The notes beneath the pieces were generated by a model. That model had not been told where the DNA came from, did no database searches, and worked only from the letters and a program-made list of their open reading frames with translations. The translations under genes were made by a program, and so were the position numbers. This document shows positions 38,057-39,980 of a stretch of 64,000 nucleotides of DNA, one piece after another. Numbering within the stretch: the first letter of the stretch is position 1; the number at the start of each line of letters is the position of its first letter. Source of the stretch: Octopus sinensis (taxonomy: Eukaryota); NCBI RefSeq assembly GCF_006345805.1, contig NC_042999.1, forward strand, positions 40,610,001 to 40,674,000. Reading direction: 5' to 3'.

Positions 38057-39980
38057 TTTACCCAAGTGTGTTGTGAGTTATTTTTTTCATGTGAAACTTT
38101 GGAAAAAAACTGTTAAAAAATTGTCAAAAATTGAATCGCGCGAGGCGTTTGCCGCTGCGTGTTTGAACCTTTTATAGAAGGTGTGTCGACCCTCAAGTCA
38201 TGGAGACTTACGCGGGGGTCGCCACAACAAAAAGTGACGAGTCACTTAGAATAAAAGAAGTGTTCTTTAGAAAAGAACAATTGAAGGAATACGAGAAGTT
38301 CGTCAAAAGGGAGGGTGACAGCGTGAAGCTGGTCCCGCCTGTGGAAACAATAGAAGAAAAAAATAACAAGACGATAACGTATAGAACGCAAGATAGAAAC
38401 ACGAGAAAACTGGTGAGAGTGACGATTGAAGAAATAGAGAAATGTCTGGGGGACATCATGAAAAAAGCGACTTTTGTAGACAGAGGAAAGAAATATGGTA
38501 CGGTGGAGGTGAGATGCGCAACAAAGGAAGTGGCGGCCTCATTGGCTTCCACTGTCCTGAAAGCGGAAAATTTCACCATGTGGCCGACGTATAAAGGAAG
38601 ACGAGGGGTACGGGTAAGAGTCCCAAAGGTGCCCCCAAATATTAAAACAGAAATGCTGGTAACAGCCATTATTGGGGCAGCAAAAGAGGAAGTAGAAATA
38701 GGGTCAATTAAGGAGACGAACGTTGTAAATTGGAAGGGATTCGGAGTCGAGTTGTGGCTGATGGCCACAATTGAAGACATCGAAAGATTTCCCTTCCAAA
38801 TAGAAATAGAAAACGAAAAAACAATTAGTGTAATAGTGGAAGGCAGAAAACCGAATTGCTACCTGTGCGGCTCAAGAGGGCACATAAAAAAGGAATGTCC
38901 GCTGTATGAATTCACAGCGGAGCAAAAAGAGACACAAAGTGGAGAGAAGGAAAACGAACACGAAGGAAAGAACAGCGAAAACAAGGAAAAGGAAATAACG
39001 GAGAAACAACAAGAGAAGGGAAGTAACAGCGCACTGAAGGAAAATGAAAACAAAGGGAAGAAGATAGTAGAAAAGGAGCAAAATTCACAGGGTGCAGAAG
39101 TAGAGGAGAAGGAGCCAAGGCAGAAGCAAGAGAAAGAAAAGGAAAGTACATTAAAGGAAAGAGAAAAAGCAGGAAAAGAACAAGAGAAGGAACAGAACCA
39201 AGAGAAAGGAAAAGATGGTATGCAAAAAGGAAAAGAAACAACAGGAAAGGAACTTAAGGCACAGGGTAGAGAGACGGCAGACAAAGAGCCAAAAAGACAA
39301 GAGAAGGAAAAAGAAAGAAGAGAAAGCAAAAAGAGAGAAAGAGAGAAACCGAGGGAGGAGAAAAAAGAGGAAGTAAGTCCTAAGAGAAAAACTAGAGAAA
39401 ACGCAGGTACGAATAGAAAATTCAAATACTATGGAACGTTGATCCATCACAAGCACTGTGAGGAGATGGAAAATTTAATAAGCGAAACAAACGGATATAC
39501 GTGGGTCAGGATGGGCACCGAATGGAAAGAAACAGGTGCACTCGTCCACGAGAACGACGCCGAGGCGTTCATCGAGGCAGCTGGCAAGAACGTGTTAAAA
39601 CATATGAAATGCCGACTTACAAGGTGGCCTCGAACATCGGAAGTTTACTCAGATTTGGTAGACATAATGGAGTATATATAAAAGAAAAGGTATTGTGAAA
39701 ACTTTAATTTGGAAATGATAAAAAGAACTTTAAATTCGGAAAAAAAAAAAAAAAAAGAAATGTTGAACTTTGTAAAACTTTTGAAATGTATGTTGAAAAT
39801 GTATAAAATGTTTTATTTGAAAAATATTATTGACGAATAAAAAACAAATGACGAAATGTAACCGCTCGATTTCGGGGATCGAGTGGGCATTACACCACAT
39901 TGTACAAACTTCATAATTCATTATTCATTCCCGATTGTATTGTCCCATCTATGTAGCCCCTAGTGGGTAATAATAAAACA
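38057..39980 (+). mobile_element. ORF1-only non-autonomous non-LTR retroposon (1924 bp) with a 12-bp TSD
   Basis: TSD ACATGGAGGAAA at 38045-38056 and 39981-39992; 143-nt 5' UTR, single ORF, 299-nt 3' UTR ending AATAAAACA; no ORF2 sequence. Confidence 0.88.
38200..39681 (+). CDS. Intact 493-aa LINE ORF1-like nucleic-acid-binding protein (putative RRM-like region, CCHC knuckle, K/E-rich region, C-terminal domain)
   Basis: Uninterrupted ORF; CYLCGSRGHIKKEC is C-X2-C-X4-H-X4-C; VIVEGRKPNCYLCGS matches IVVEGRRPRCYLCGS of the Tx1 ORF1 in this window. Confidence 0.88.
   Translation: METYAGVATTKSDESLRIKEVFFRKEQLKEYEKFVKREGDSVKLVPPVETIEEKNNKTITYRTQDRNTRKLVRVTIEEIEKCLGDIMKKATFVDRGKKYGTVEVRCATKEVAASLASTVLKAENFTMWPTYKGRRGVRVRVPKVPPNIKTEMLVTAIIGAAKEEVEIGSIKETNVVNWKGFGVELWLMATIEDIERFPFQIEIENEKTISVIVEGRKPNCYLCGSRGHIKKECPLYEFTAEQKETQSGEKENEHEGKNSENKEKEITEKQQEKGSNSALKENENKGKKIVEKEQNSQGAEVEEKEPRQKQEKEKESTLKEREKAGKEQEKEQNQEKGKDGMQKGKETTGKELKAQGRETADKEPKRQEKEKERRESKKREREKPREEKKEEVSPKRKTRENAGTNRKFKYYGTLIHHKHCEEMENLISETNGYTWVRMGTEWKETGALVHENDAEAFIEAAGKNVLKHMKCRLTRWPRTSEVYSDLVDIMEYI

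What the first reader, a model, noticed from the sequence alone, without database searches (positions are those of the whole stretch)
39936..39980. One 3'-terminal stem-loop shared by a LINE, the ORF1-only element and a SINE family
Seen: Tx1 3' end (minus, ~8430-8386) TTGTTCTATCTGTGTGCAGCCCTGTGTGGCTAATAAAGAAAC; SINE family 2 tail (about 35934-35974, also about 59890-59931, 60073-60114, 60257-60298) TTGTCCTCTCTGTGTTTAGCCCCTTGTGGGTAGTAAAGAAAT; ORF1-only element TTGTCCCATCTATGTAGCCCCTAGTGGGTAATAATAAAAC. All can form a small hairpin just before the AATAAA-like motif (AGCC/GGCT in the LINE; GCCC/GGGT in the other two). Established: 'stringent' LINE RTs recognise a 3' stem-loop that partner SINEs copy, whereas mammalian L1 uses poly(A). 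Inference: a three-member system of autonomous Tx1-clade LINE, ORF1-only helper or parasite, and tRNA-SINE that all use one RT-recognition signal.
Basis: partly seen in the sequence, partly recalled or inferred. Interest (0 to 1): 0.8.

Follow-up and report, generated by a model that had tools for sequence, protein, structure and literature searches.

The report
Shared 3' tail of octopus retrotransposons
A 45-50 base end-piece with a tiny conserved hairpin is shared by an L1-type LINE, a LINE-derived element that keeps only the first gene, and a SINE in this octopus sequence. It is most likely the signal the LINE's reverse transcriptase uses to choose its templates, which would name a driver of the octopus SINE expansion.

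Summary
The window (an Octopus genome) holds exactly six copies of one ~48-nt 3' module. One ends a dead L1-superfamily LINE, one ends an intact ORF1-only element, and four end SINE units. A profile built only from LINE tails outside the window, or only from Argonauta hians, recovers exactly these six.

Across 5-6 LINE families, the ORF1-only families and the SINEs, the last 45 nt are 78% identical on average. The preceding 150 nt are at shuffle level (50%).

RNAalifold predicts a single 4-bp hairpin with loop CTTGT. One of its pairs occurs as C-G, G-C and A-U, and another switches C-G to U-A. The hairpin is not thermodynamically special.

- All three tails use the same stem register.
- The window LINE has the most divergent tail and is probably not the direct partner.
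- The ORF1-only element is an old lineage under purifying selection (dN/dS 0.11-0.34), not a recent deletion copy.
- These elements sit head-to-tail in arrays and in (ATCT)n, which is Tx1-like target behaviour.
- Tx1 clade membership and the tRNA origin of the SINE are not proven.

Verdict: a new member of the known "stringent LINE plus tail-sharing partners" kind. Such cases are rare in the L1 clade, and I found none reported for octopus.

The parts
8386..8433 (-). 3' tail module of the L1-superfamily LINE. The hairpin AGCC-CUGUGU-GGCU is at 8411..8398, followed by AAUAAAGAAAC.
8146..8385 (-). (ATCT)n microsatellite directly after the LINE tail. It is either a 3' repeat of the element or the target microsatellite.
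   Evidence: A 5'-truncated 96%-identical copy in L006 has (ATCT)n on both sides.
9095..11899 (-). LINE ORF2 (APE endonuclease, RT, zf-RVT), broken into three reading-frame pieces.
12938..13524 (-). Degraded LINE ORF1 (VVEGRRPRCYLCGS), homologous to the ORF1-only protein.
38058..39981 (+). ORF1-only element (about 1.92 kb). It carries no RT and ends in the shared tail.
38200..39681 (+). Intact 493-aa ORF: an ORF1-like N-terminal half with a CCHC knuckle (residues 219-234), a K/E-rich middle, and a conserved C-terminal ~90 aa.
38046..38057 (+). ACATGGAGGAAA, the 5' copy of the 12-nt direct repeat that brackets the ORF1-only element.
39982..39993 (+). ACATGGAGGAAA, the 3' copy of the direct repeat. 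The same junction and flank follow a full LINE in L008.
39933..39980 (+). 3' tail module of the ORF1-only element. The hairpin GCCC-CUAGU-GGGU is at 39956-39968, followed by AAUAAUAAAAC.
39862..39886 (+). Second hairpin (CCGCTCGAT-TTCGGGG-ATCGAGTGG) in the ORF1-only 3'UTR. It is conserved between ORF1-only families but absent from the LINE 3'UTRs.
35755..35975 (+). SINE copy ending in the tail (hairpin 35951-35963), flanked by the GGTATTAT direct repeat.
59706..59932 (+). Full-length SINE ending in the tail (hairpin 59908-59920).
59934..60299 (+). Two 183-nt 5'-truncated SINE units (59934-60115 and 60117-60299), each ending in the tail and stacked head-to-tail.

Best explanation
The ~45-50-nt module (consensus UUGUCCCCUCUAUGUU-N1-3-[GNCC CUUGU GGNU]-AAUAAAGAAAU) is the 3' template-recognition and initiation signal of a group of octopod L1-superfamily, Tx1-like LINEs. 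The ORF2 protein (endonuclease plus RT) binds this end of an RNA and starts target-primed reverse transcription at or just after ...AAAGAAAU(A). It does not start on a poly(A) tail.

Two kinds of non-autonomous RNA carry the same module and are copied in trans. One is a 1.8-1.9-kb element that encodes only an ORF1-type nucleic-acid-binding protein, like HAL1 or HeT-A. The other is a ~230-nt SINE, probably transcribed by Pol III.

Shown: the module is shared, terminal, selectively conserved, and has a covarying 4-bp stem. The ORF1-only gene is under purifying selection. The units carry flanking direct repeats.

Inferred: The window's own LINE is a dead copy of a sister family that sits in (ATCT)n. 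The more likely working partners are the families seen at L001/L006/L008, L005 and L007.
For: 1. Terminal position. Every LINE copy examined (about 9 copies in 5-6 families, from Octopus vulgaris, O. sinensis and Argonauta hians), every ORF1-only unit, and the Octopus and Argonauta SINEs end in the module.
2. Island of conservation. Between families only the last 45-50 nt align. Mean identity is 0.78 in the last 45 nt, 0.50 in the preceding 150 nt, and 0.46 for shuffles. The LINE families concerned share only about 50-65% ORF2 amino-acid identity.
3. Structure. RNAalifold on 38 tails predicts only the 4-bp hairpin. Pair 27-37 is CG in 20 sequences, GC in 11 and AU in 1. Pair 29-35 changes CG to UA in one LINE. 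91.4% of cells are paired, against 81% in shuffles and under 50% in slid controls.
4. Specificity. Leave-out profiles recover exactly the six window tails.
5. ORF1-only elements are real and long-lived. Their ORF is homologous to LINE ORF1 (E 2e-12). dN/dS is 0.11-0.34, including pairs with dS above 1. Copies lie at 5 loci on 4 O. vulgaris chromosomes. Their 3'UTR is unrelated to the LINE 3'UTRs except for the tail.
6. Insertion signatures. A 12-nt direct repeat brackets the window ORF1-only element. An 8-9-nt repeat flanks the SINE at 35755 and a SINE dimer in L007.
7. Precedent. Ohshima 2012 (PMC3472496) describes the same pattern for a stringent monocot L1: the last 45 nt conserved, a hairpin with compensatory changes, and SINEs sharing the end.
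Against: No experiment links the tail to the RT.

The stem has only 4 bp, one of them usually G-U. Single-sequence folding gives z-scores of -0.8 to +0.1, no better than shuffles. A longer lower helix shows no covariation.

Most of the covariation signal comes from one C-G/G-C split between two lineages, so the number of independent events is small, about 3.

Primary sequence is conserved as strongly as the stem, including an AAUAAA hexamer that could serve polyadenylation in the Pol II elements.

The sample is about 290 kb of cephalopod DNA, not a genome-wide census. No intact full-length ORF2 was seen in the Octopus loci; the longest open stretches are 645-678 codons.
Confidence: 0.72

Rival explanations
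1. Inherited scar. The SINE and the ORF1-only element were born from a LINE 3' end. They keep the sequence only by descent, or because AAUAAA serves as a poly(A) signal, and the tail has no role in RT recognition.
For: The module contains AATAAA. The hairpin is thermodynamically unremarkable. The primary sequence is highly conserved.
Against: Descent alone does not explain a 45-nt island at 78% identity next to 3'UTR sequence at shuffle level. This holds across families with dS above 1 and across two genera. A Pol III SINE has no use for a poly(A) signal, yet keeps the whole module including the upstream UCUAUGUU and the stem. Compensatory pair changes are present. Copies end right after the module without a poly(A) tract.
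Confidence: 0.1
2. DNA-level homing signal. The conserved tail mainly works as DNA: it is the landmark next to which the endonuclease nicks. New copies are therefore added directly after existing tails. That would conserve the tail and build head-to-tail arrays.
For: ORF1-only units and LINEs lie tail-to-head in arrays in L001, L002, L006, L007 and L008. One 12-16-nt motif is repeated after every tail, and the motif differs between arrays: ACATGGAGGAAA, ATTCCAGTCTKYWAT, ATCGATACTC. SINE units are also stacked, with the same junction in the window and in L007. An unidentified relative (L011) forms 6.4-kb tandem arrays of full LINEs.
Against: Solitary SINE insertions (35755) and the (ATCT)n-embedded LINE family have no neighbouring tail. 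Arrays can also arise by repeated insertion at a favoured target site, by template jumping, or by unequal crossing-over. This reading is compatible with, not exclusive of, RNA recognition.
Confidence: 0.1
3. The ORF1-only 'element' is not mobile. It is a tandemly amplified, host-retained gene family derived from LINE ORF1, and it was spread by segmental duplication and unequal crossing-over.
For: There are arrays of 6-8 near-identical units with a 1.78-kb period (L002, L008). The ORF is under purifying selection. Some loci share long flanks: window against L008 over 500 bp, and L001 against L006.
Against: Each unit keeps the LINE-type terminal module and is bracketed by short direct repeats. 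Units are interleaved with full LINEs on the same strand. At least three diverged subfamilies each keep the tail. The same tail-flank junction follows an ORF1-only unit in the window and a LINE in L008.
Confidence: 0.08

Closest known systems
Stringent L1-clade LINE/SINE pairs: maize LINE1-1_ZM with ZmSINE2/3, and Chlamydomonas L1-1_CR with SINEX-3_CR (Ohshima 2012, PMC3472496)
   Same: L1-clade ORF2. The last ~45-50 nt are conserved among otherwise diverged LINEs. A small hairpin shows compensatory changes. SINEs carry the same end.
   Different: Those cases are plant or algal and mostly end in poly(A). Here the host is an animal (octopods), there is no poly(A), some families end in microsatellites, and an ORF1-only element shares the tail as well. 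[quoted passage not shown]
Eel UnaL2 / UnaSINE1 (Kajikawa & Okada 2002; Nomura 2006; cited in PMC3472496)
   Same: A conserved 3' stem-loop followed by a short terminal sequence or repeat, recognised by the LINE RT, with a SINE that copies it. This is the experimental paradigm for what is inferred here.
   Different: UnaL2 belongs to the L2 clade. Its stem-loop requirement was shown experimentally; here nothing has been tested.
ORF1-only non-autonomous LINEs: HAL1 (L1 clade), HeT-A (Jockey clade), Ag-Sponge (CR1 clade) (Kojima 2018, PMC5786205)
   Same: They encode only an ORF1p-type protein, depend on an autonomous LINE for RT, and share terminal sequence with it.
   Different: The octopus ORF is only 30-37% identical to the LINE ORF1s seen here. 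It has an extra K/E-rich region and a C-terminal domain. Its 3'UTR is unrelated to the LINE 3'UTRs apart from the 50-nt tail. It forms long tandem arrays.
Tx1-clade target-specific LINEs and their passengers: Tx1L in Tx1D, Keno, Kibi/Koshi in (TC)n/(TTC)n, and Tx1-Mar with SINEU in crocodilians (Kojima 2015, PMC4494074)
   Same: Insertion into microsatellites, here (ATCT)n. Tandem insertions that sandwich one repeated 12-16-nt motif, as described for SINEU-3.
   Different: For SINEU no LINE sharing its 3' end was found, and the link was inferred from target preference. Here the link is the shared tail. Clade membership of the octopus LINEs is untested.

Membership tests
Stringent-type LINE/SINE partnership (shared 3' tail) | The SINE 3' end is homologous to the 3' end of a LINE in the same genome | tested here: met
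   SINE against LINE tails: 0.73-0.87 identity over 45 nt, with a shuffle maximum of 0.57. BLAST finds 36-49-nt tail-only matches at 78-97%.
Stringent-type LINE/SINE partnership (shared 3' tail) | The tail is conserved far more than the rest of the 3'UTR among diverged LINE lineages | tested here: met
   Identity is 0.78 in the tail against 0.50 in the preceding 150 nt. Only the tail aligns between families. Argonauta-only and LINE-only profiles recover the window tails.
Stringent-type LINE/SINE partnership (shared 3' tail) | A stem-loop supported by compensatory changes | tested here: met
   A 4-bp stem. Pair 27-37 occurs as CG, GC and AU. Pair 29-35 changes CG to UA. 91.4% of cells are paired. 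Caveats: few independent events, and folding z-scores are about 0.
Stringent-type LINE/SINE partnership (shared 3' tail) | The tail is required for reverse transcription or retrotransposition by the LINE protein | not testable with these tools
   Needs a retrotransposition or TPRT assay.
L1 superfamily, Tx1 clade | ORF2 with an N-terminal APE endonuclease, an RT, and a C-terminal zinc-binding domain | tested here: met
   Pfam Exo_endo_phos, RVT_1 and zf-RVT on the three ORF2 pieces.
L1 superfamily, Tx1 clade | The RT is closer to L1 ORF2p than to other LINE RTs | tested here: met
   Best PDB match is human L1 ORF2p at E 3.5e-25 over residues 9-512. R2 proteins score 4e-7.
L1 superfamily, Tx1 clade | Phylogenetic placement of the RT inside the Tx1 group, using reference sequences | not testable with these tools
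   No named Tx1 reference appeared among the 166 homologues. Indirect support only: among recently active O. vulgaris LINEs, the published annotation lists L1-Tx1 as the only L1-type group (PMC13282606).
L1 superfamily, Tx1 clade | Target-sequence-specific insertion | tested here: inconclusive
   Both copies of the window family lie in (ATCT)n, one of them 5'-truncated with (ATCT)n on both sides. Arrays sandwich a repeated 12-16-nt motif. The sample is too small, and some loci may be segmental duplicates.
ORF1-only non-autonomous LINE (HAL1 / HeT-A / Ag-Sponge type) | Encodes an ORF1p homologue and no RT | tested here: met
   The 493-aa ORF has zf-CCHC and is homologous to LINE ORF1 at E 2e-12. 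The 1.78-1.92-kb unit has no RT match.
ORF1-only non-autonomous LINE (HAL1 / HeT-A / Ag-Sponge type) | Shares its terminal sequence with an autonomous LINE | tested here: met
   88-98% identity over the last 45-50 nt with the L001, L006 and L008 LINE tails.
ORF1-only non-autonomous LINE (HAL1 / HeT-A / Ag-Sponge type) | Multiple dispersed copies with insertion signatures; coding capacity maintained | tested here: met
   Five O. vulgaris loci on four chromosomes. A 12-nt direct repeat in the window. dN/dS 0.11-0.34.
ORF1-only non-autonomous LINE (HAL1 / HeT-A / Ag-Sponge type) | Recognisably derived from its partner LINE by loss of ORF2 (as for HAL1) | tested here: not met
   The ORF is only 30-37% identical to the neighbouring LINE ORF1s. 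The 3'UTR is unrelated except for the tail. Either the split is ancient or the parent family was not sampled.
tRNA-derived SINE | A head that folds or aligns as a tRNA, with A and B boxes | tested here: inconclusive
   ARAGORN finds no gene and Rfam has no match at E <= 1. On a 7-copy consensus, only a relaxed ARAGORN run gives a degenerate cloverleaf. A B-box-like GAGTTCAAATTCC is visible.

The most novel reading that the evidence does not exclude
The tail may work twice: as the RNA signal read by the RT, and as a DNA landmark beside which new copies are inserted. LINEs, ORF1-only helpers and SINEs would then be added head-to-tail into mixed arrays. In that case the ORF1-only lineage is an obligate supplier of ORF1 protein for the LINEs, as HeT-A is for TART. 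This Tx1-like system would then be a main engine of the octopod-specific SINE expansion.
Probability: 0.15. Interest if true: 0.75.

Novelty: new member of a known kind. Interest (0 to 1): 0.5.

Why it matters
SINEs make up about 11.6% of the Octopus vulgaris genome. Almost all recently active SINE families (893 of 900) are 'unclassified', with no LINE partner named (PMC13282606). Work on octopus LINE activity has centred on RTE elements (PMC9115989).

A shared, selectively conserved tail points to L1/Tx1-type LINEs as the mobilising machinery for at least one abundant SINE family, in both Octopus and Argonauta.

It would also add an animal example to the very short list of stringent L1-clade LINEs. 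That bears on whether 3'-end-specific recognition is ancestral in the L1 clade (Ohshima 2012).

Finally, it gives a compact system with three classes of template on which the rules of template choice by an L1-type RT could be tested.

Tried and rejected
- ARAGORN and Rfam (gathering thresholds) on the window: no hits. Rfam at E <= 1 on the SINE: no hits.
- Fuzzy-regex tail search: timed out. Replaced by nhmmer.
- Naming the clade from homologue names: 166 hits, none named Tx1 or L1.
- Exact look-up of the window's ORF1-only protein to identify the source record: not on record. Its closest proteins are Octopus vulgaris.
- AlphaFold model of the ORF1-only protein from a 10-row alignment: mean pLDDT 35.8, unusable, so no fold search was run. 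PDB sequence search gives only weak CCHC matches.
- A longer lower helix (UCU.UGUU with AAUA.AGA) suggested by single-sequence folds: no covariation, and two pairs are unpaired in about half the sequences. Rejected.
- 'Solo 50-nt tail' in L001, first read as a 5'-truncated ORF1-only copy: it is the tail of a full LINE.
- Simple internal-deletion origin of the ORF1-only element: rejected, because the 3'UTR and ORF are too divergent.
- Deeper conservation: cuttlefish (L010) and an unidentified ENA relative (L011) are not hit by the tail profile. By eye they carry a GGC-CTTGT-GCC hairpin, a second hairpin and AAATAAA. This is suggestive only.
- A single-target-element model for the array flanks could not be made consistent. 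Left open.
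Full report
**1. What is at the site**

The window is AT-rich (36% GC) and comes from an Octopus genome. The 493-aa protein encoded at 38200-39681 has homologues only in Octopus vulgaris, at up to 96% identity. The LINE pieces match proteins from Octopus sinensis, Argonauta hians and cuttlefish.

The finding's coordinates (39936-39980) are the last 45 nt of a ~1.9-kb element. 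That element contains one intact ORF with a CCHC zinc knuckle and no reverse transcriptase.

The other quoted strings are also present:
- The end of a minus-strand LINE at 8433..8386, followed by (ATCT)n.
- SINE ends at 35928-35975, 59885-59932, 60068-60115 and 60252-60299.

**2. Is it more than chance?**

Yes.

- A covariance model run without filters finds exactly six matches in 64 kb (48-64 bits). The next candidate scores 14.8 bits.
- That model contains the window sequences, so I repeated the test with profiles that do not.
  - Seven LINE tails from other loci and other families find the same six at E <= 2.4e-7; the next hit is at E = 0.72.
  - A profile built only from Argonauta hians sequences finds them at E 6.5e-7 to 0.011.
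- The three window tails are 0.70-0.76 identical to each other. Shuffled 45-mers average 0.46 and never exceed 0.57.

**3. Wider sampling**

Through protein homologues I fetched about 227 kb of cephalopod DNA (loci L001-L011). Of this, about 177 kb (L001-L008) was screened with the first tail profile.

- Every related LINE copy in Octopus and Argonauta ends in this module about 510-670 nt after the ORF2 stop. That is roughly nine copies in five or six families, with about 50-65% ORF2 amino-acid identity to the window LINE. The L009 copy is only a weak match.
- Every ORF1-only unit ends in it, in at least three subfamilies.
- So do SINEs in both Octopus and Argonauta.
- Between families nothing else in the 3'UTRs aligns. 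BLAST returns only the terminal 36-50 nt, at 78-98%.
- Mean identity is 0.78 in the last 45 nt and 0.50 in the preceding 150 nt, which is shuffle level.

This is the same pattern that Ohshima (2012, PMC3472496) used to infer stringent 3'-end recognition in a monocot L1 lineage.

**4. Structure**

- RNAalifold on 38 non-identical tails predicts one element only: a 4-bp stem closing a 5-nt loop, CUUGU.
- In one register the stem is G-U, N-N', C-G, C-G.
- The second pair is C-G in 20 sequences, G-C in 11 and A-U in one.
- The innermost pair becomes U-A in one LINE.
- 91.4% of cells pair, against 81% after shuffling partners and under 50% when the partner columns are slid.

The window LINE has one extra loop base.

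The limits are real:
- There are few independent events.
- The stem is tiny.
- Single-sequence folding is no better than shuffles (z from -0.8 to +0.1).
- A longer helix is unsupported.
- Flanking primary sequence (UCUAUGUU upstream, AAUAAAGAAAU downstream) is conserved as well, so recognition probably reads sequence as well as shape.

**5. The LINE**

- ORF2 at 11899..9095 on the minus strand has APE, RT and zf-RVT domains. It is split by frameshifts.
- ORF1 is degraded.
- The best solved-structure match is human L1 ORF2p (E 3.5e-25), against R2 at 4e-7.
- Placement in the L1 superfamily is therefore solid. Tx1 membership could not be tested phylogenetically.

Two behaviours fit what is described for Tx1-clade elements (PMC4494074):
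- A 96%-identical, 5'-truncated copy in L006 has about 290 bp of (ATCT)n directly upstream and more downstream. The window copy has ATCTATCTATC near its presumed 5' end (14128-14113) and (ATCT)n after the tail.
- The related families occur in head-to-tail arrays that sandwich a short repeated motif (see section 6).

**6. The ORF1-only element**

- Its N-terminal half aligns with LINE ORF1s at 30-37% identity (E 2e-12 to the window LINE's ORF1 remnant).
- It also has a K/E-rich middle and a conserved C-terminal ~90 aa.
- dN/dS between copies is 0.11-0.34, including pairs with dS above 1. This is an old lineage that has maintained its coding capacity, not a one-off deletion.
- Its 3'UTR shares only the tail with the LINE 3'UTRs. 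It has its own second conserved hairpin at 39862-39886.
- In the window it is bracketed by ACATGGAGGAAA, at 38046-38057 and at 39982-39993.

In O. vulgaris, units lie tail-to-head, often directly upstream of a full LINE on the same strand (L001, L006, L007, L008). After every tail comes the same 12-16-nt motif that also starts the array's downstream flank:
- ACATGGAGGAAA in the window and L008.
- ATTCCAGTCTKYWAT in L001 and L006.
- ATCGATACTC in L007.

The junction and 500-bp flank that follow the window's ORF1-only element follow a LINE in L008.

This is what sequential insertions at one site with target-site duplication would give. Kojima (2015) describes the same for Tx1-mobilised SINEU-3. 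Template jumping, homing next to an existing tail, or unequal crossing-over remain possible, and I could not separate them.

**7. The SINE**

- Copies are about 89-90% identical to each other.
- The copy at 35755 is flanked by GGTATTAT. A dimer in L007 is flanked by GAAGAGTGA. The inserted unit therefore ends with ...AAAGAAAUA and has no poly(A).
- The SINE tail is closest to the LINE_L005, LINE_L001/L008 and ORF1-only tails (0.78-0.87). It is least like the window LINE (0.73-0.76).
- SINE copies with the same head but other tails exist in the window (7129-~7340 and 60300-~60500). This fits the known habit of SINEs to swap LINE-derived tails.
- tRNA ancestry of the head is not demonstrated here.
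- A second LINE type in the window (57048-57515 and 58478-58840, minus strand, ending in (AAT)n) lacks the module.

**8. Interpretation**

The best-supported reading is a stringent-type system. An octopod L1/Tx1-like RT recognises a ~45-50-nt 3' module and starts cDNA synthesis at its end. ORF1-only elements and SINEs are copied because they carry the module. I put this at about 0.7.

The rival readings, each at about 0.1, are:
- The tail is only an inherited scar or poly(A) signal.
- The tail mainly acts as a DNA homing site.
- The ORF1-only units are an immobile tandem gene family.

**9. Novelty**

The principle is textbook (Ohshima 1996; Kajikawa & Okada 2002). ORF1-only LINE derivatives are known: HAL1, HeT-A and Ag-Sponge (PMC5786205).

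Tail-sharing SINEs are rare in the L1 clade: three among more than 800 LINE families in 2012 (PMC3472496). For the Tx1-linked SINEU no shared tail was found (PMC4494074). I found no paper linking octopus SINEs to an L1/Tx1 tail. Repbase and Dfam notes could not be checked.

I therefore rate it a new member of a known kind. Its practical value is to cephalopod genomics.

Noticed in passing
window 59706-60500; L007 28863-28254 and 19646-19238 (minus): SINE units are stacked head-to-tail with identical junctions at independent loci. One junction is tail|GGTATTTCGTCTGCC, where the next unit starts at SINE position ~45. The other is tail|AGAAAC(G/A)TTAGCACGCC, where the next unit starts at position ~11 and carries a different tail. 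The L007 dimer is flanked by one direct repeat, so it was probably inserted as a unit.
   Followed up: partly
window 7129-~7340 (+), 60300-~60500 (+), 7508-7420 (-): SINE copies with the same head and body but different 3' ends (for example ...CCCAAAACTTTGGGGCTTTTTGCCTAGAATAGAAAAGG). They presumably borrow the tail of another LINE clade.
   Followed up: no
window 57048-57515 (-) and 58478-58840 (-); 3' end near 56620: Two copies of the C-terminus (zf-RVT, CRICGDGQETINHIISSCPVL) of a different LINE. It ends in (AAT)n and lacks the shared tail module.
   Followed up: partly
window 37346-38045: A ~700-nt sequence directly upstream of the ORF1-only element. It includes two 145-nt tandem monomers (37399-37543 and 37547-37691, 88% identical). 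The same sequence precedes ORF1-only units in L001 and L006, and occurs inverted in L007. It may be a 5'UTR/promoter, a target element, or another repeat; this is unresolved.
   Followed up: partly
window 39982-40473; L008 18113-18612; L001 11221-11405; L006 16333-16524; L007 18677-18817: The downstream flank is itself repeated. Window 39982-40287 starts like an ORF1-only 5' end. Window 40288 onward (ATTCCAGTCTGTTATATATTTTGAG...) is the flank of the L001 and L006 LINEs, and occurs in L007 with no element upstream, which may be an empty site.
   Followed up: partly
window 39862-39886: A 9-bp hairpin, CCGCTCGAT-TTCGGGG-ATCGAGTGG, in the ORF1-only 3'UTR. It is conserved in the 71%-identical L002/L008 subfamily but absent from the LINE 3'UTRs.
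   Followed up: no
window 1555-2052 (+), 4838-5650 (-): Mariner/Tc1-type transposase fragments (Pfam Transposase_1, E 1e-19 and 2e-19).
   Followed up: no
window 14124-14340 (-), with copies at 55426-55590, 45999-46136, 6784-6915, 47910-48068 and 33777-33965; also window 40689-40765 with copies at 55396, 47880, 33747 and 6953(-): Short dispersed repeats. One contains the palindrome GACCGTCGTACATATATATATATATATGTACGACGGTC (14270-14229) and lies just 5' of the LINE. Likely MITE- or SINE-like families.
   Followed up: no
L011 (ENA ERZ21867824, organism not identified) 1-18307: Three full-length related LINEs (ORF1 plus a 1158-aa ORF2; 43% identity to the window ORF2) in a head-to-tail tandem array with a 6.43-kb period. 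The 3' region has a GGC-CTTGT-GCC hairpin, a 7-bp hairpin and AAATAAAG.
   Followed up: partly
L007 1-9345 and 30612-39929: In O. vulgaris chromosome record OX597818.1, a LINE/ORF1-only array lies between two large haemocyanin genes (Tyrosinase and Haemocyan_bet_s repeats).
   Followed up: no
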